This document shows, piece after piece, positions 13,433 to 21,786 of a stretch of 64,000 nucleotides of DNA (positions are counted from its first letter, which is position 1; the number at the start of each line of letters is the position of its first letter). The notes beneath the pieces are model-generated. The model did no database searches, was not told the DNA's origin, and saw nothing but the letters and a program-made list of their open reading frames with translations. A program made the position numbers and the translations under genes. Source of the DNA: Prasinococcaceae sp. CCMP 1430 (taxonomy: Eukaryota; Plantae; Prasinodermophyta); contig RQSC01000005.1 in the NCBI GenBank assembly GCA_013416795.1, forward strand, positions 388,733 through 452,732. The letters are read 5' to 3'.

Positions 13433-15519
13433 CTACGGCGGCGGCGGCGCCCTGCCCGTGTCGTAGAGTTTGCGAAGCCTGGGGTCCTCCAGCACGCGGT
13501 AGGCCGCCTCGAGCTTGTGGAATTTGAGCACTGACGCGGGGTCGTCGCCGGCAGTGTCTGGGTGGCACTCGAGCGCCTGCTTCCGAAACGCAGCCTTAAT
13601 CTCTGAGGCCGTCGCGCCGGGGGGCACGCCGAGACGCTTGTAGTAGCCATGAACGTCGCGCACGTTGGCGCCCTCCGCACCGGCGCGCCCCCCCATCGAG
13701 CCCCAGCGAGGCGCGCGCCCGCCACCGCCACGCGAGCGGGAGCCGTGGTCCTGGCGCGCGCGCATGCGCTCGCGGGCCTGCGCGTGCGCGGAGCGTCAGC
13801 CTGCGCGTGCGCACGGCGACCGGCGAGCAGCCACGCGGCAACGAGCTGAGCGGCATGGCATCACGTCAGACACGCACGCGAAGCGCACGGACCTTGTCCT
13901 CCGCTGCTCTCCTGGCCTCTTCGTGCCTCTGCCGCTGCTGCGCCCTGACGGACGCTCGTCGCTCCACCTGCTCCTTGAGTAGGCTCTCGGCCCACATCCG
14001 CTTTGTGTCGCCATTCGCGGACCGGCGCTCGTCCTGCTCGAACATCTCCCACTCGACGGCCTCGCGTGCGCGTAGGAGCTGCGCTGCCGCCTGCGACGAT
14101 GCGTGCGCCGAGCCCTCCACCGACGAATCGCGCCACGACCGCGTTTCGCGGAACCAGCGCTTGTGCCGCGCGGTCTTGTTCTTGAAACCCGACACTGCGC
14201 TCGCGCGCGCTCGACGGGTCAGCCTTTGGTGGTCATCTATGGTGGCGCCCGAGCAGGGGCGGACGGGTTCGCACACGCTCGCGAACGCGGTGCGCCCGCC
14301 CGCATGCGTCGCAGCTGTTGCAGCGCGCGCGAGCGCGTGCTCACCCTGCGGGTCCACGGACTTCGCCCCGCTTGCCGCATCGTGGTGGTCCTGCGGCTGA
14401 TGCATTTGCGTGAACAGGCTGCTTCCCAGTCCCGTGAGCACCACGCTCGTGGTGGCGGCCTCGATGCCGAAGTGAGCCAGCGCGTAGGCCGCGAGCTCGG
14501 GCGACGCCAGCATCAGCGCGCCTTGCACACTGCCGAGCGCCGCCGCGAGCGCACCCGCGGCCGACAGCCCCGAGCGATACGGGCACAGGTGGCGCTGCGC
14601 GGCGACGCCCGCAACCGCGCCACCGACGGCCGCGCGGTACCAGCTTGGTACGGTCACGACTGACTCGCCGTGGCTGAACTTCGTGCTCCAGCGGTAGCGT
14701 GCGCTGTACAGCGGCAGGAGGAGCGCCGACGCGCGACGCTCACGCACGCTCAGCGTCACCGTCACGTTGCGGACGTGCTCTGTGGCGTACTCTTTCTTGA
14801 GACGCGCAGCGCTCGCCGCCACCTCTGTCTCGAAGATGTGCCGCAACGCGAATCCCCACGCCATGCCGCGGCCCATCTCGAAGTCGTCGATGTCGGCTGC
14901 CGACGCAGTCGCGCATCCGGCCGCCGGGCCCTCGGCGATTCCGCCGCTCCCGGCGGAGGCGTCCGCATCGTCAGCGTCCGCGCCGCCGCCTGCCTGGCGC
15001 GCGCGGGCGGGGTGCGCGTTGAGCGCCTTAGCGAGCAGCTCGCGCGGCCGGCCCGTGCCACCGAGGCGCGCGGCTGCGGCAAGATCGCGCCGCTCCCGGT
15101 AGCCTGCGTAGACCTGCAGCGCCTCATGGTCGAGGGCCGCATAGCGCACGCCGCCCACGCTGCCGCGACTTGGCACGTCGCTCCAGTGCACGGCCGGGCC
15201 GTCGCTCGCGCCGCCGCCGCCGCTCGTCCCGCCCGCGCTGCCACCGCCGCCCACGGCCCTGCCTACCTCGCCGCTGTAGCTCACGTCGACCGTCGCATCG
15301 AACGCCCAGAAGGGGAGCATGGCCGCGCGCACGGTCGTGCTGTCGCTCGCGAATATTCTGTCCTGGCCATGGTGCAGTGAGATGTCCGGGTGCGATAGAG
15401 TTGTCAGCGTCGAGGCATTAAAAGCTTCGTCGAGGAACACGCCGAAGCTCGATGCCCCTGCTGCCTCAGACAGCCGACGCCGAACGAGCTGCGGACCCGC
15501 CGGCGCAGCTTGTCCACGA
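13433..15519 (-). CDS. Membrane-associated DnaJ protein with C-terminal J-domain; 5' end in gap; spliced
   Basis: J-domain YYKRLGVPPGATASEIKAAFRKQALECHPD...AYRVLEDP...RKLYD at 13433-13660. The upstream 524-aa ORF ends at a GTGCGT donor and carries LPFWAFD and LLLPLY motifs, a hydrophobic stretch and a coiled coil. Confidence 0.7.
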
Positions 15520-15794
15520 NNNNNNNNNNNNNNNNNNNNNNNNNNNNNNNNNNNNNNNNNNNNNNNNNNNNNNNNNNNNNNNNNNNNNNNNNNNNNNNNN
15601 NNNNNNNNNNNNNNNNNNNNNNNNNNNNNNNNNNNNNNNNNNNNNNNNNNNNNNNNNNNNNNNNNNNNNNNNNNNNNNNNNNNNNNNNNNNNNNNNNNNN
15701 NNNNNNNNNNNNNNNNNNNNNNNNNNNNNNNNNNNNNNNNNNNNNNNNNNNNNNNNNNNNNNNNNNNNNNNNNNNNNNNNNNNNNNNNNNNNNN

Positions 15795-17047
15795 AGGGCC
15801 GCGCCGCGGTGGGCGCGGCGCAGGGCGGCGACGAGGGCGTGACCACGCGGCCGCTTGTTGCGCTGGCGGGCGCCGCGGCGTTCAACTGCATTTTGGGCTC
15901 GCTGTACCTGTGGAGCGTATACTTGGCCGGACTGGAGGCGGAGCTCGGTGCGTCTCGCGCGACGCTGTCGGCGTGCTTCTCGCTGGCGACGACGTGTTTC
16001 ACGGTGGCGTCCACCGTGGGGCTCATTGTCTTCGGCCGCGCGCCGCCCGCCGAGCTGGCGCTCGGCGTGCTCGGGGTGGCATCGTTCGGGATGTGGTTCT
16101 CCGGCTTCTCGGGCACGCTGTGGGGCCTCTTCGCGGGCTTCGGCGTGCTCTTCGGAGCATGCAACGGCGTTGGCCACGGCACCAGCCTGCGCATCGGCCA
16201 GTCCAAGCTCTTCGACAAGCGCAAGGGCATGGCCACGGGGGTGCTCTTCGCCGCGCGCGCGGGCGGCACGGTCCTGCTCGCGCCCCTCGCGATGACCATG
16301 GTGGCCAAGTTCGGCGCGCTGGGCGCGCTGCAGCTCAACGGCATCGTGTTCGCGGCGCTGGCGGTGCCGGTGTACCTGGCGCTGAGGGCGTCCAACGTCA
16401 ACTACGCCCTCAAGCCGCCCAAGGACTCCAAGAAGACCTCGATCGGCGCGCTGAGACCGCACGCCGCGACCTGCCTCAAGTTCTCGGCCATCCTCGGCCT
16501 CGGCGCGTTCTCGGGGCTGCTGAGTTACGGCCATGCGGCGCCGGTGTTGGCCGCGCGCGGCGCGGAGGCCAGCGCGCTGGGCGTGGCGGTGAGCGTCTTC
16601 AGCGCGGTGAACGCCGGCGCACGCCTGGTGGGCGGCGGCCTCGTCGACAGCATGTCCGCCCGCCACTGCCTGATGATCGCGTGCGCGCCCGCGGTGGCCG
16701 GCCTCGCCATCGCCACGCTCGCGCCCGCGTCCCTCGTCGCGGCGATGGCGGGGCTGTGTGGCAGCGCGGCCACGTACGGACTGCTGGCCACCTGCCTCGC
16801 CGTGAGCGTCGGCAGGCTGGTCGGGCAAGACCTCTTCGCGACGGCATACGGGCTGATTTTCACCTCCTGGGGCGTGGCCGGCATCCTCGGGCCGGTGCTC
16901 GGCGGCGCGCTCTACGATGCCACGCGGAGCTACACGCTGTCGTTGGGCGCCGCGTGCCTGTGCGCTGCCGCCGCACTCCTGTGCGCCGCGGCGCTCCCTG
17001 CGGACCCCAAGGAGCAGGCCGTTGGGGCCGAGGAGGTTGCGGCGTGA
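15795..17047 (+). CDS. MFS transporter, oxalate/formate antiporter (OFA)-like; 5' end in gap
   Basis: About 12 hydrophobic segments; LGSLYLWSV, GLFAGFGVLFGACNGVGHG, RKGMATG and YGLIFTSWGVAGILGPVLGGALYD. Confidence 0.85.
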
Positions 17048-17215
17048 GCGGTGGTCCCGCCGTCGACCCGACGGGCCCTTTCGTGCGCGCGCGCGCTGCC
17101 CAACGAGCGGCGAGCGGGTCCGCTCGCCGCTGCCCCGCACTATTTTTTTGCGCAGTCTTCTAATCGTCCATACCTCTGTACACTCCTCGGGGCGTCGCGG
17201 CCAGCGCGCTCGTCA

Positions 17216-17556
17216 TCATACTCGCCCCGCGCGGCGCGCCCGGAGCGCGTTCGCGACGCGCGGACCCACTGCTAGGCCAGCGGCGGCCGCAGCAGGCGCG
17301 ACGGCCGCGTTGAGGATCAGGTGCGCAGCGTAGGCGCCGAGCTGCCGCCCCTGCAGCAGCGCGACGGCCTCGAGCGAGAACGTGGACGCCGTCGAGAAGC
17401 CGCCGCACGCGCCCGTTCCCAGGAGCAAGTACGGCGCCGTGCCTCTTCCCGCCCCGGGCCACGCCGCCAGAGTGCCCAGCGCCGCGGACGCGGCGATGTT
17501 GATCCCGGTGGTGGCCCAGCCGGGCGCCGCCGCCGCGGCCGCCCCGCGCCCCCGCG
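17216..17556 (-). CDS. Fluc/CrcB-family fluoride channel, C-terminal portion (cut by N at 17557)
   Basis: TTGINIAASAALG and LLLGTGACGGFSTASTFSLEAV match the CrcB T-x-x-V/I-N and G-x-x-GG-F-T/S-T-x-STF motifs. Confidence 0.7.
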
Positions 17557-17760
17557 NGGTCACGCCGAGGCGGGGAGGGGGGGTATACGCGCGACGCCTT
17601 TTGGTCAGCGACGCGCACGCGCCTCGTTTCGCGAGAGCGCTTTGCGCGTGAGGGCATTGGAGAGGGGCACAGAGTGGGCGCGCGCGGTGTCGAGCAAGCA
17701 TGCCAAGGCGGGGAGCGCCGCGGCATCGGGGTGCGACCCCGTCGCGGCGCCATGACGCAC

Positions 17761-18005
17761 ATGCCGCCGAAGATGTTCACGAGGAGCGCCTTGACGCGCG
17801 AGTCTGCCGTGATGATCTTGAAGGCCTCGGTGACCTGATGCTCGGACGCCGCGCCGCCCACGTCGAGGAAGTTGGCCGGCGTGCCGCCGTGCAGCTTGAT
17901 GATGTCCATGGTGGCCATCGCCAGGCCCGCGCCGTTCACCATGCACCCGATCTCGCCGTCCAGCCCGATGTAGTTGAGGTCGACCTTGGCGGCGGCCACC
18001 TCGCG
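17761..18005 (-). pseudogene. Isolated internal exon of succinyl-CoA ligase beta subunit (fragment, possibly misassembled)
   Basis: [51 protein letters not shown]...[11 protein letters not shown], followed by a GTGCGT donor; no upstream or downstream exons in the window. Confidence 0.85.
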
Positions 18006-19529
18006 GCGGCGTGCGAGCTGATCGGGCTCGACCCGGACGAGGGGACGCGGCCGGAGTTCGCCGAGGCGTTCGCCGGCAACATCGTGCTCGCGGGCTCCGA
18101 GCCGTACGCCAACTGCTACGGCGGCCACCAGTTCGGCACGTGGGCGGGGCAGCTCGGCGACGGCCGCGCGATCAGCCTCGGCTCGGTGCGCGGGCCGGTT
18201 GGGGCGGCGGCGGCGGGGGCGGACTCCGGCGGCGCGGGCGGGCTTGTGGAGCTTCAGCTCAAGGGCGCGGGCCTGACGCCGTACAGCCGCCGCGCGGACG
18301 GCCGGGCGGTGCTGCGCTCCTCGCTGCGCGAGTTCGTGGGCTCCGAGGCGATGCACGCGCTGGGCGTGCCCACCACGCGCGCGCTCAGCCTGGTGGCCAC
18401 TGGCGACGGCGTGCTCCGCGACATGTTCTACAACGGCAACGCGCGGCTCGAGCCCGGCGCCGTCGTCTGCCGCATGGCGCCGTCGTTCGTGCGCTTCGGC
18501 TCGTTCGAGCTGCCCGCGGCGCGCAAGGACGAGGCGCTGATGCGCGCCATCGCCGACCACGTCATCGCGCAGCACTTCCCGCACTTGGCGGCGGTGGAGG
18601 AGGGCCGCGAGCGCTACGGCGCGTGGCTCGACGAGGTGACGGCCTCCTCGGCGCGCCTCGCCGCGCGCTGGCAGTCGGTGGGCTTCACCCACGGCGTGCT
18701 CAACACCGACAACATGTCCGTGCACGGCGTCACCATCGACTTCGGGCCGTACGCCTTCATGGAGGCGTTCGACCCCAACTTCACGCCCAACTCGTCCGAC
18801 TCGACGCGCAGGTACTCCTTCGGCGCCCAGCCCAACATCGTCGCGGAGAACTGCGTGCGCCTCGCCATGGCGCTCGAGCCGCTGCTGGGCGCCGACAAGG
18901 CCGCCAACACGGAGCGCGCGGCCGACGTCTTCGAGAGGACCTTCTACGAGAGCTGGCACGACGAGCTGCGCAAGAAGCTCGGGCTGGGCCGATTCGTGGA
19001 GGGGCGCGACGACCAGCTCGCGGTCGGCCTGTTCACGCTCATGGCGCGCGCGCGGGCGGACTACACCAACACGTGGAGGCTGCTGGCGCGCGTGGGCGAG
19101 GGCATGAGCGCCGCCGAGGCGTTCGACCAGATCAGGCCCGCGCTGGGGGCGCACGGGCTCGACTTCGTTAGCCTGGAGGGGGACGACATCAACGAGGCCA
19201 ACGAGGACCCGGCGGAGCAGGTCGAGGCCGCGGGCGTCGCGTGGATGGCGCGGTACCTCGACAGGATTGCGGAGGACGATGCGCTGAGCGGCGAGGAGAG
19301 GGCGGCGCTCATGCGCGCCTCCAGCCCCAAGTACGTGCCGCGCAACCACCTCATGCAGCGGGCCATCGAGGCGGCGGAGGCGGGGGACGTCGGGCCGCTG
19401 GATCGTCTGATGGAGGTGATGACGCGGCCGTACGACGAGCAGCCGGACGCCGAGGCGGAGGGCTACTGCTCGCCCGCAGCGCGCGAGGACCTGCGCGCGG
19501 GCGTGACGGTGCTCTCCTGATCGAGCTAG
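18006..19529 (+). CDS. SELENOO: Selenoprotein O (AMPylase pseudokinase), N-terminally truncated; UGA 19518-19520 probably Sec; stop TAG 19527-19529
   Basis: [54 protein letters not shown] and TIDFGPY; the C-terminus reads VTVLS-TGA-SS-TAG. Confidence 0.92.
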
Positions 19530-19703
19530 GCCCGTCGTCGTCGTCGTTGATTCGTTTCCGTGGAGGCTTGGCACGGCATGGGCCACGAGACGCGACGGGC
19601 CGACGCGAGTGAGTGAGGCTACACTCGTGTCGGCGGCGTCAAGGCCGCATGGAACGATCCACGCGACGCGACGGACCGCTTCGCACGCGCAGGGGCAGCA
19701 CGG

Positions 19704-19777
19704 AGGGTGGGCAAGCATGACGGACCGCCCCGTAATGGCACTTTGCCAGGGGGCGCCGCTCCCGACGACGTCGTCCT
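19704..19777 (+). promoter_or_regulatory. Candidate type II SECIS element in the SelO 3' UTR
   Basis: ATGA at 19717, AA at 19734-35 and GA at 19764-65. Helix II GGA/TCC plus CGCCCC/GGGGCG, apical mini-stem TGGC/GCCA, and helix I AGGGTGG/TCGTCCT, all paired by eye. Confidence 0.7.
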
Positions 19778-19952
19778 GACGACGACGCGCCCACGCACGC
19801 ACTCCTCGCCCCTTGTTGTCGCGCGGCGCACGTGTACACACAGTAAGAAAGCAAAGTAAGGCACGCGCGCCCCGGCTCGCTTGCCGTAGGCGCGCGTGTG
19901 ATTGCTTTTTTTTTTTGCGCGGGGGGGGGGGCTCAGAGGAATGCGACGCCTC

Positions 19953-20040
19953 TGTGTGTGTCTGTGTGTGCGTGCGTGCGTGCGCATGTGCGTGTGCGCG
20001 CGCGTGTGCGTGTGTGTGTGTGTGCGCGCGCGCGCGCGTG
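19953..20040. repeat. Compound (GT)n/(GC)n microsatellite between SelO and mL46 3' ends
   Basis: Read directly. Confidence 0.8.
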
Positions 20041-20087
20041 GCGGAGAGGTACAAAGAATGGGTTGGCGTCAAAAAAATGAGGGCGCT

Positions 20088-20850
20088 CTACTCGCCGCCG
20101 TCGTCGTCCGACCAGTACGGCAGGGGCATGAGCGCCTCGAGCATGTCGCGCGCGTCGCCCTCCGGCAGCCTCTCGAGCGCCTGTTCGCGCGAGAGCCAGG
20201 CGTAGTCGTGCGCGCCGTGCGTCTCCTCGACGTCGCCGGAGATGATCTGCGCCTTGCAGAAGAGGCGCAGGGTGTCGCCACCGTCCTCGAGCACGTGGCC
20301 CGCGGGCCCGTTGCCCACGTGGAAGACCTCGAAGCCCGCACGGCCGCCGGGCAGCGGCTGGTCGCCGCGGGCCTCCCGCACGGGCAGCGGGTCCGCGAAG
20401 CGCCGCCCACCCACCGCCGCCGACGCGCGCTCCGCGGCAGCGCGCACCGTGTCGCCCGGGCCCTCTGCGAGGTCCGCGCTCGGCAGCCGCCAAGCCCCCC
20501 CCTGCGCGTCCTGCAGCAGCAAGAACAGGCGCTCGGACTGGTGCTTGAGCAGGGAGCGCGGGTCCGACGCGGCCTCCTCGATCGCCTTGGCCGCGGCGCG
20601 CTCCGCCGCGAGCACGTGCGCGTGCTCCAGGCCGTCCTCCCTGTCCGCCTTGATGACCACCTCGCGCGCGGGCTCCTCGATGGACGAGAGCATCGGGTTG
20701 CGCTGGGCGTTCCTGTAGTCGAAGGAGAAGGAGAGGTACGAGGCGCGCCATTTGGGATCGGCGGGGATCACCAACGGAAGGCGCTCGATGAGGAGCGACA
20801 GGGTGATGAGGGAGTAGGGGTGGGGGGAGGAGGAGGACGGGTCTCGCGTT

Positions 20851-21074: not shown

Positions 21075-21396
21075 CGTGTCGAGTGTCCGCCGTCGGACCC
21101 CCCCCCCCTCTGCTCCGCCCGCCCCCCCGGGGCGCGCCGAGCGGCTCGGGACGGGGACGCGCGCTGGCCGCCCGCCCGCCGCGCGCCCTATCGCTCACCC
21201 GCAGCGCCGCGGCGGCGCCCTGCGGCGGGACGGCCGGCGGATAGCGCATCGCATGCGAAAGCAAAGGCGAAAATCTCCCTCGATTCGCAGGGTCTGCGCG
21301 CACATTCAAATCGAATCATGCGATCGGTGCGTCCGGTGGCTTGACCCTAATTATGAAATTGTTCATATACTAACATGTTTTGTCAACCGTAACCAC

Positions 21397-21478
21397 GATG
21401 GTGTGACCGAGTGGTTAAGGTGCTCGGCTGCTAACTGAGTGGGCTCTGCCCGCGCGAGTTCGAATCTCGTCACCATCG
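21397..21478 (+). tRNA. tRNA-Ser (GCT)
   Basis: Acceptor stem GATGGTG/CACCATC, D-loop GAGTGGTTAAGG, anticodon arm CTCGG-CT-GCT-AA-CTGAG, long variable arm GGGC-TCT-GCCC and T-loop GTTCGAATC. Confidence 0.95.
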
Positions 21479-21786
21479 ACAGCACAATTTTGGCTTCATT
21501 TTTGCTCAACAACACAATTAAATTACGGACCCGAAATGACACGAATCCGTGTTTGATTTGCGCACGCACGTCGGCGGCTGCGCTTGCCGCCCCCCACAAC
21601 GCGCGCTCGCGCGCCGCGCGCGCGCGCATGGCGTAGCCGCATCGCGCGCGCGGGGTGAGGCAAGTCCGCGTTCTCCCCTCCCCCTCCCCCCTTCCCACCT
21701 CTGCATCACGAACAAAAAATCACAAGCACACACAACCTTTCAATCCGCACGCCGCCCTCCCCCCCTCCCCTCCTCCCCTCCTTCCC

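What the first reader, a model, noticed from the sequence alone, without database searches (positions are those of the whole stretch)
19491..19777. Hidden selenocysteine in SelO: in-frame UGA plus a SECIS hairpin
The ORF track stops at TGA 19520, but the sequence continues TCG AGC TAG, giving ...VTVLS-U-SS*. SelO homologues end in a Cys/Sec-S-S motif, with Sec in vertebrates and Cys in many bacteria and plants. About 190 nt downstream lies a canonical-looking type II SECIS (ATGA...12 nt...AA, mini-stem, GA). Standard annotation would truncate this protein and miss that it is a selenoenzyme (redox-regulated AMPylase).
Basis: partly seen in the sequence, partly recalled or inferred. Interest (0 to 1): 0.75.

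Follow-up and report, generated by a model that had tools for sequence, protein, structure and literature searches.

The report
Selenocysteine codon ending algal SelO gene
The apparent stop codon of this green picoalga's SelO gene almost certainly encodes selenocysteine and is served by an insertion hairpin about 200 bases downstream; this is already known for SelO in animals and other marine picoalgae, so the result is mainly a correction of the public gene model.

Summary
The SelO reading frame (PF02696, E 5.6e-111) reaches TGA at 19518-19520 and continues TCG AGC TAG, giving ...VTVLS-U-S-S-stop. Of the 120 best homologues, 118 end ...LSCSS. Only this gene and its two closest relatives stop exactly at the Cys column.

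A 71%-identical orthologue on marine metagenome contigs also has TGA, then Ser-Ser with a different Ser codon (TCG TCG), then TAG. The only significant similarity between the two 3' UTRs is a SECIS core: ATGA, 13 nt, AA, mini-stem, GA. The orthologue's element matches Rfam SECIS_1 end to end (22.3 bits, below the gathering score). The window's element does not match, because a 19-nt hairpin is inserted in its 3' internal loop.

The organism is Prasinoderma coloniale. The public model PRCOL_00001378-RA ends at ...VTVLS, so it lacks U-S-S.

Sec-SelO with a type II SECIS is already described in Ostreococcus, and this scan has already reported Sec-SelO on another piece of this genome. I rate it a sound annotation fix of low novelty.

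One caveat: the first 54 codons of the public model are absent from this assembly. Left of 18003 lies an antisense fragment of a succinyl-CoA ligase beta exon, which is probably a mis-join.

The parts
18003..19517 (+). SelO coding sequence (505 codons), kinase-like AMPylase domain
   Evidence: Pfam PF02696 E 5.6e-111. Identical to the last 505 residues of the public model PRCOL_00001378-RA. Homologous to the solved E. coli YdiU/SelO structures 6k20 and 6iii, E about 2e-95.
19518..19520 (+). TGA read as selenocysteine
   Evidence: Aligns with the Cys of the ...LSCSS end in 118 of 120 homologues. The orthologue also has TGA here.
19521..19526 (+). Ser-Ser codons (TCG AGC) after the Sec codon
   Evidence: They match the family's C-terminal S-S. 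The orthologue has TCG TCG, so Ser is kept through a codon-family switch.
19527..19529 (+). TAG, the true stop codon
   Evidence: Nucleotide similarity to the orthologue ends 3 nt after it.
19707..19712 (+). SECIS helix I, 5' strand (GUGGGC)
   Evidence: Pairs with 19789-19794 in the MFE and in the constrained folds. The orthologue has an unrelated 7-bp helix at the same place, 4 nt before AUGA.
19717..19720 (+). SECIS core AUGA (5' half of the non-Watson-Crick quartet)
19721..19731 (+). SECIS helix II, 5' strand
   Evidence: Ten pairs with 19750-19762. The upper six have pairing probability of at least 0.87, the lower four 0.14-0.27. Pair 19724-19760 is A-U where the orthologue has G-C.
19734..19735 (+). 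Conserved unpaired AA, 13 nt after AUGA
   Evidence: The spacing is the same in the window, L004 and L001.
19736..19748 (+). Apical mini-stem (UGGCA CUU UGCCA), the type II feature
   Evidence: Present in every fold; pairing probability 0.999 for the G-C pairs.
19750..19763 (+). SECIS helix II, 3' strand
19764..19765 (+). SECIS core GA (3' half of the quartet)
19769..19787 (+). Extra 7-bp hairpin inserted in the 3' internal loop (absent from the orthologue)
   Evidence: It is kept in strain contig L004, with one base change and a shifted register. It probably explains why Rfam SECIS_1 misses the window's element.
19789..19794 (+). SECIS helix I, 3' strand (GCCCAC)

Best explanation
This is the SelO gene (protein AMP-transferase with a kinase-like fold) of the marine green picoalga Prasinoderma coloniale. 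Its UGA at 19518-19520 is decoded as selenocysteine, so the protein ends ...VTVLS-Sec-Ser-Ser and translation stops at UAG 19527-19529. Recoding is directed by a type II SECIS in the 3' UTR (about 19707-19794; core AUGA 19717-19720 and GA 19764-19765). By analogy with other eukaryotes, this element recruits SBP2, eEFSec and Sec-tRNA to the ribosome. The sequence pattern and its conservation are shown here. Sec insertion itself, the extent of the 3' UTR and the redox role of the C-terminal Sec are inferred.
For: - The ORF is SelO (PF02696, E 5.6e-111). It is homologous to solved SelO/YdiU structures and keeps the HGV-NTDN and D-F-G-type motifs.
- 118 of the 120 best homologues end ...LSCSS. The window's gene, P0001 (71% identity) and P0002 (99% identity) all end ...LS, at the Cys column.
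- All seven contigs of the 71%-identity clade read TGA TCG TCG TAG; the window reads TGA TCG AGC TAG. Ser is therefore kept through a change of codon family after the supposed stop.
- Nucleotide similarity between the orthologues runs through the TAG and ends 3 nt later.
- The best local similarity between the 3' UTRs is the SECIS core, score 35 against 20.4 +/- 2.6 in shuffles.
- The orthologue's element folds as a textbook SECIS (z -3.2) and matches Rfam SECIS_1 over model positions 1-64 (22.3 bits, E 0.016).
- In the window, the SECIS fold lies within 1 kcal/mol of the MFE for the inner part and within 2.7 kcal/mol for the whole element.
- My pattern scan gives one hit in the whole window, at this site and on the correct strand.
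- One helix II pair changes G-C to A-U between the lineages, and helix I differs completely in sequence but pairs in both.
- Organism and gene model: EukProt P. coloniale PRCOL_00001378-RA.
- Literature: Sec-SelO with the Uxx end and a type II SECIS in Ostreococcus (PMC2375036, PMC3281104); P. coloniale reported to have many Sec proteins (PMC7455551).
Against: - Rfam SECIS_1 finds nothing in the window, even at E 10.
- The orthologue's score of 22.3 bits is below the gathering score of 35.
- The window's MFE fold is not the SECIS fold, and its z-score is -0.2.
- The lower part of helix II is weak (pairing probability about 0.27). A C.C mismatch (A.G in the orthologue) lies next to the quartet.
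- The 19-nt hairpin in the internal loop is atypical.
- Only two lineages (three distinct sequences) exist, so covariation support is thin.
- No transcript data were available to show that 19700-19800 lies within the mRNA.
- No Sec machinery gene or tRNA-Sec lies in this window.
- The first 54 codons of the gene are missing from this assembly.
Confidence: 0.9

Rival explanations
1. The TGA is an ordinary stop. This lineage lost the C-terminal Cys-Ser-Ser, and the protein ends ...VTVLS, as in the public gene model.
For: The public model and the metagenome gene callers stop there. The window's SECIS has no Rfam score. The catalytic domain lies upstream of these three residues, so it is intact without them.
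Against: TGA, Ser-Ser and a stop are all kept in two lineages whose proteins are 71% identical, with a TCG/AGC codon switch. By my own arithmetic, at this base composition the chance of Ser-Ser-stop directly after a stop is about 1e-4. A SECIS core is the only conserved piece of the 3' UTR. By published account and earlier scan notes, this genome uses Sec widely.
Confidence: 0.05
2. The locus as assembled is a 5'-truncated or rearranged copy, either a pseudogene or an assembly chimera. In that case what is seen here is not an expressed gene, whatever the TGA means.
For: The first 54 codons of the public model occur nowhere in the window. Identity to the model starts abruptly at 18003 with no AG acceptor before it. 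The sequence to the left is antisense to a lone succinyl-CoA ligase beta exon fragment. Earlier notes report missing 5' exons in this assembly for other genes (s1-377788, s1-386595).
Against: The remaining 505 codons are identical to the public model, which comes from a genome annotation in which most models had transcriptome support (PMC7455551). A 99.8%-identical environmental contig covers the 3' part and the SECIS. The breakpoint is better explained as a mis-join in a fragmented, gap-rich assembly with 14 N runs in this window. This would not affect the Sec reading of the real gene.
Confidence: 0.05

Closest known systems
Ostreococcus tauri / O. lucimarinus selenoprotein O (Lobanov et al. 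2007, PMC2375036; Dudkiewicz et al. 2012, PMC3281104)
   Same: It is a marine green picoalga. SelO carries Sec two residues before the C-terminus (Uxx end), has a type II SECIS in the 3' UTR, and has gene models that were mis-annotated as ending at the UGA.
   Different: No Mamiellophyceae sequence is among the 120 best hits to the window's protein. Its nearest named relatives are the Cys-type SelO of Chlorophyta and streptophyte algae, at 47-52% identity. I could not place the Ostreococcus protein in the same tree. The window's SECIS carries an extra hairpin in the internal loop.
Human SELENOO (mitochondrial AMPylase; PMC12409994)
   Same: Kinase-like SelO domain with a conserved Sec near the C-terminus, and Sec decoding driven by a SECIS.
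   Different: The vertebrate form ends CxxUSS. Here the residue three positions before Sec is Thr (...GVTVLS-U-SS), so there is no nearby CxxU partner. The mitochondrial targeting peptide could not be assessed because the 5' end is missing here.
Cys-type SelO/YdiU of bacteria, Chlorophyta and streptophyte algae (solved E. coli YdiU structures 6k20 and 6iii; P. syringae SelO 6eac)
   Same: Same domain at about 50% identity, same catalytic motifs, same ...LS-[C/U]-SS end.
   Different: Cys instead of Sec, and no SECIS needed.
Rfam SECIS_1 (RF00031), eukaryotic SECIS
   Same: AUGA/GA quartet, helix II, unpaired AA and an apical mini-stem. The orthologue's element aligns to the whole model.
   Different: The window's element has 3 + 19 + 1 nt in the 3' internal loop (a three-way junction) and gets no score. 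The orthologue's score is below the curated cut-off.

Membership tests
SelO / YdiU protein adenylyltransferase (PF02696) | Match to the family profile above the curated cut-off | tested here: met
   372 bits against a cut-off of 22.8, E 5.6e-111, profile positions 41-464 of 466.
SelO / YdiU protein adenylyltransferase (PF02696) | Kinase-like catalytic motifs shared with solved SelO structures | tested here: met
   phmmer hit to E. coli YdiU 6k20, E 1.7e-95. [23 protein letters not shown] and T-D-F/Y-GP align identically.
SelO / YdiU protein adenylyltransferase (PF02696) | C-terminal [Cys/Sec]-x-x end | tested here: met
   TGA-Ser-Ser-stop at the position of C-S-S in 118 of 120 homologues.
SelO / YdiU protein adenylyltransferase (PF02696) | Complete N-terminal region (profile positions 1-40) | tested here: not met
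   It is absent from the window. It is present in the public model P0121 and in orthologue P0125. This is most likely a defect of this assembly, not of the gene.
Eukaryotic selenoprotein gene | In-frame UGA aligned with Cys (or Sec) in homologues, with conserved coding sequence after it | tested here: met
Eukaryotic selenoprotein gene | SECIS element in the 3' UTR on the coding strand | tested here: met
   All sequence and structure features are present and conserved in the orthologue. The formal Rfam score is listed separately below.
Eukaryotic selenoprotein gene | Sec machinery in the genome (tRNA-Sec, SBP2, eEFSec, PSTK, SepSecS, SPS) | not testable with these tools
   Only this window can be read, and its only tRNA is tRNA-Ser(GCU). 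Indirect support: PMC7455551 reports many Sec proteins in P. coloniale, and earlier scan notes list more than 10 other Sec genes in this genome (unchecked).
Eukaryotic selenoprotein gene | Selenium actually incorporated | not testable with these tools
   Needs 75Se labelling or mass spectrometry.
Type II SECIS (Rfam SECIS_1, RF00031) | AUGA ... AA ... GA with helix II of about 10-12 bp and an apical mini-stem | tested here: met
   AUGA 19717-19720, AA 19734-19735, mini-stem 19736-19748, GA 19764-19765, 10 helix II pairs. The orthologue has the same architecture.
Type II SECIS (Rfam SECIS_1, RF00031) | Score at or above Rfam's gathering threshold (35 bits) | tested here: not met
   No hit in the window at E up to 10. 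The orthologue scores 22.3 bits, E 0.016 for a 111-nt search. By my own knowledge, this model is built largely from animal sequences.

The most novel reading that the evidence does not exclude
The plant-type SelO lineage, which is Cys-type in every other green alga among the 120 best hits, is a selenoprotein in Prasinodermophyta, the earliest-branching green phylum. This would suggest that the SelO of the first green plants carried Sec, and that Chlorophyta and Streptophyta later replaced it with Cys. In addition, the P. coloniale element would be a working SECIS with a third hairpin inserted in the internal loop (a three-way junction). That would widen the structural tolerance assumed by SECIS search tools.
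Probability: 0.35. Interest if true: 0.35.

Novelty: new member of a known kind. Interest (0 to 1): 0.2.

Why it matters
The public P. coloniale model PRCOL_00001378-RA lacks the last three residues, including the Sec. In other SelO proteins the Sec or Cys at this position is highly conserved (PMC12409994) and has been proposed to have a redox role (PMC3281104). Correcting the model adds one entry to the selenoproteome of the only sequenced member of Prasinodermophyta. It also gives a data point on Sec/Cys exchange at the base of the green lineage. Finally, it shows that covariance-model SECIS searches can miss a genuine element that carries an insertion in its internal loop. None of this changes the current understanding of SelO or of Sec decoding.

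Tried and rejected
- Rfam scans of 19400-20200 and of 19690-19810 at E up to 10 gave no SECIS hit in the window.
- The unconstrained fold of 19690-19800 is not the SECIS fold and is no more stable than shuffles.
- My first two SECIS scanners relied on the MFE fold or demanded both A's unpaired. They missed the window's candidate, and the first also missed the orthologue's element. The third scanner was tuned afterwards, so its single-hit result is partly post hoc.
- MAFFT plus RNAalifold on the three elements mis-registered the 3' halves because of the insertion, so its pair counts are not usable.
- All seven contigs of the P0001 clade carry an identical SECIS, so they add no variation.
- I searched for the missing SelO N-terminal exon by tblastn with four homologues, by an HMM of 116 N-termini against all six frames, and by tblastn with the first 60 residues of the public model, which cover its first 54 residues. 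Nothing was found.
- I searched for further succinyl-CoA ligase beta exons by motif and found none.
- The public model is not on record in the contig index.
- Supplementary Table 22 of PMC7455551, the selenoprotein list, was cut when stored and could not be read.
- Liang et al. 2019 (PMC6627142) mentions neither SelO nor Prasinoderma in its main text.
- A look-up of earlier findings by sequence was blank.

Full report
**Observation.** The + strand ORF 17700-19520 ends ...GTG CTC TCC TGA at 19518-19520. The next codons are TCG AGC TAG, so a read-through gives ...VTVLS-U-S-S-stop. The ORF is SelO (PF02696, 372 bits, E 5.6e-111, profile positions 41-464). It is homologous to the solved E. coli YdiU/SelO and P. 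syringae SelO structures, and the catalytic motifs are conserved.

**Is the TGA a Sec codon?** A word-based search of the large protein collection returned 120 best homologues.
- 118 of them end ...LSCSS.
- The two exceptions are the closest relatives, P0001 (71% identity) and P0002 (99% identity). Both end ...LS, exactly one residue before the conserved Cys.
- The DNA behind P0001 (contigs L001-L003 and L013-L016, from Tara and other marine metagenomes) reads TCC TGA TCG TCG TAG.
- The second Ser is therefore AGC in the window and TCG in the orthologue. Serine is kept across a change of codon family in two lineages whose proteins differ at 29% of positions.
- Nucleotide similarity between the two loci runs through the TAG and stops 3 nt later.
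- By my own arithmetic, at this base composition the chance that a stop is followed by Ser-Ser-stop is about 1e-4.

Taken together, this is strong evidence that translation continues past the UGA.

**SECIS anatomy in the window**.
- AUGA lies at 19717-19720.
- The 5-bp mini-stem UGGCA/UGCCA lies at 19736-19748.
- GA lies at 19764-19765.
- Helix II has ten pairs. The upper six have pairing probability of at least 0.87. The lower GGA(C)/(G)UCC part has only 0.14-0.27.
- Helix I (GUGGGC 19707-19712 with GCCCAC 19789-19794) starts 4 nt before AUGA.
- Between GA and the 3' strand of helix I lies a 7-bp hairpin (19769-19787) made of GAC/GTC repeats.

**SECIS stability and database score.** The SECIS fold costs 1.0 kcal/mol more than the MFE for the inner part and 2.7 kcal/mol more for the whole element. 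The free fold is no more stable than shuffles (z -0.2). Rfam SECIS_1 finds nothing in the window.

**SECIS in the orthologue.** In L001 the equivalent element at 2331-2402 folds by itself into a textbook SECIS (z -3.2). It aligns to all 64 positions of Rfam SECIS_1 at 22.3 bits, E 0.016 for the 111 nt searched, which is below the gathering score of 35.

**SECIS conservation between the two lineages.**
- The best local alignment between the two 3' UTRs is exactly the SECIS core: window 19715-19757 against L001 2339-2384. It scores 35 against 20.4 +/- 2.6 in shuffles, with 1 of 300 shuffles reaching it.
- One helix II pair is A-U in the window and G-C in L001.
- The top pair of helix II is G.G in the window, U.G in the strain contig L004 and G-U in L001.
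- Helix I has unrelated sequence in the two lineages but pairs in both.
- A pattern scan of my own gives a single hit in both strands of the window (this site), one in L001 and one in L004. Its thresholds were fixed after I had seen the candidate.

Only three distinct sequences exist, so covariation support is thin. The case rests on conservation and architecture.

**Organism and public model.** The 90%-identity cluster of P0002 also holds EukProt EP00793 Prasinoderma coloniale PRCOL_00001378-RA (P0121, 559 aa). Its last 505 residues are identical to window 18003-19517, and it ends ...VTVLS. This confirms the organism named in earlier notes.

The genome paper gives a GC content of 69.8%, which fits the window. 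It says that P. coloniale has a high number of Sec proteins, similar to Mamiellophyceae (PMC7455551). The table listing them could not be read.

**Sec machinery.** None lies in this window; the only tRNA is tRNA-Ser(GCU). Earlier notes of this scan report many other Sec genes in the same genome, including GPx, TrxR, Prx, SelU, MSP, PDI and Grx. I did not check those notes.

**Earlier reports by this scan.** Two notes report Sec-SelO on another piece of this genome: s1-377792, and s1-393122 with the end ...GVAFLS-U-SS. That end differs from the one here. The scan has therefore found this kind of gene before on other DNA, and the genome probably has two Sec-SelO genes.

**Mechanism.**
- Shown here: the codon pattern, its alignment to Cys, conservation of the downstream codons, and a conserved SECIS-like element on the same strand about 200 nt downstream (117 nt in strain contig L004, 94 nt in the orthologue).
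- Inferred from established knowledge of eukaryotic Sec decoding: the SECIS recruits SBP2 and eEFSec with Sec-tRNA, so UGA is read as Sec and the protein ends U-S-S.
- Inferred from the family: SelO transfers AMP from ATP to Ser, Thr or Tyr of substrates involved in the oxidative stress response, and carries a highly conserved C-terminal Sec or Cys (PMC12409994).
- There is no Cys near the Sec here (...AGVTVLS-U-SS), unlike the C-x3-C or C-x4-C ends of many homologues.

**Comparison with what is known.** Sec-SelO with a Uxx end is described for Ostreococcus (type II SECIS), Porphyra, stramenopiles and animals. Mis-annotation of its UGA as a stop has been noted explicitly (PMC2375036, PMC3281104).

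In a quick maximum-likelihood tree, the window and P0001 form one clade (SH-aLRT 100) on a long branch. That branch sits at the base of the Cys-type SelO of Chlorophyta and Closterium, with weak support (74). The bacterial sequences lie on the other side. The gene thus looks like the Sec form of the plant-type SelO. I could not include the Mamiellophyceae proteins, so I cannot say whether this is new.

**The 5' end.**
- Pfam positions 1-40 are missing.
- The first 54 residues of the public model are genuine SelO N-terminal sequence, similar to orthologue P0125. They occur nowhere in the 64 kb.
- Identity to the model starts abruptly at 18003, with no AG before it.
- The sequence to the left (about 17762-18020, minus strand) encodes half of a succinyl-CoA ligase beta CoA-ligase domain (PF00549, E 3.7e-18, profile positions 1-62 of 128). 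No other exon of that gene lies in the window.
- Further left is a CrcB-like ORF.
- The orthologue's N-terminus is contiguous with the rest of its gene.
- The window has 14 N runs, whereas the published assembly is 22 PacBio chromosomes. Other agents noted missing 5' exons in this assembly for other genes.

I therefore read the junction as a mis-join of this assembly, not a truncated gene, but I could not test that. It does not affect the reading of the 3' end.

**Verdict.** This is a sound annotation correction and a new member of a well-known kind, so interest is low. The only slightly unusual features are the hairpin inserted in the SECIS internal loop, which hides the element from the Rfam model, and the position of this Sec form at the base of an otherwise Cys-type green-algal clade.

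Noticed in passing
window 17762-18020 (- strand), junction at 18002/18003: A lone exon-like fragment of succinyl-CoA ligase beta (PF00549, profile positions 1-62 of 128, E 3.7e-18) lies antisense and directly abuts SelO codon 55. The first 54 codons of the public SelO model are absent from the whole window. This is probably a chimeric join in this assembly at a GCGGCGGCG microhomology.
   Followed up: partly
window 17216-17701 (- strand): CrcB-like (fluoride channel) ORF, PF02537, E 1.4e-13, profile positions 24-103 of 103. A single N at 17557 lies inside it.
   Followed up: partly
window 15452-17047 (+ strand): Major-facilitator transporter ORF (PF07690, E 1.4e-20), interrupted by a 275-nt N run at 15520-15794.
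   Followed up: no
window 17160-20072 (- strand): A 970-codon open frame runs antisense across the whole SelO gene. Apart from the succinyl-CoA ligase piece it has no family match. It is an artefact of roughly 70% GC content, not a gene.
   Followed up: partly
window 19536-19612, 19860-19958 and 18409-18569, against L004: The 99.8%-identical Tara contig L004 lacks 77 nt and 99 nt of the 3' UTR on either side of the SECIS, while the SECIS itself is kept with two base changes. L004 also has 55 nt where the window has 161 nt of conserved coding sequence, which is probably a scaffold defect in L004.
   Followed up: partly
window 19900-20045: A T11 run, a G run and a long (GT)n/(GC)n microsatellite lie directly downstream of the SelO 3' UTR. 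They produce spurious weak miRNA and IRES matches in Rfam.
   Followed up: no
window 21396-21480 (+ strand): tRNA-Ser (anticodon GCU), the only tRNA in the window.
   Followed up: no
L013 333-2183 (P0125) and L001 about 395-600: The orthologue's longest gene call adds about 68 Arg/Ala-rich N-terminal residues before the conserved domain. This looks like an organelle targeting peptide. The public P. coloniale model starts directly at the conserved domain and may be 5'-short.
   Followed up: no
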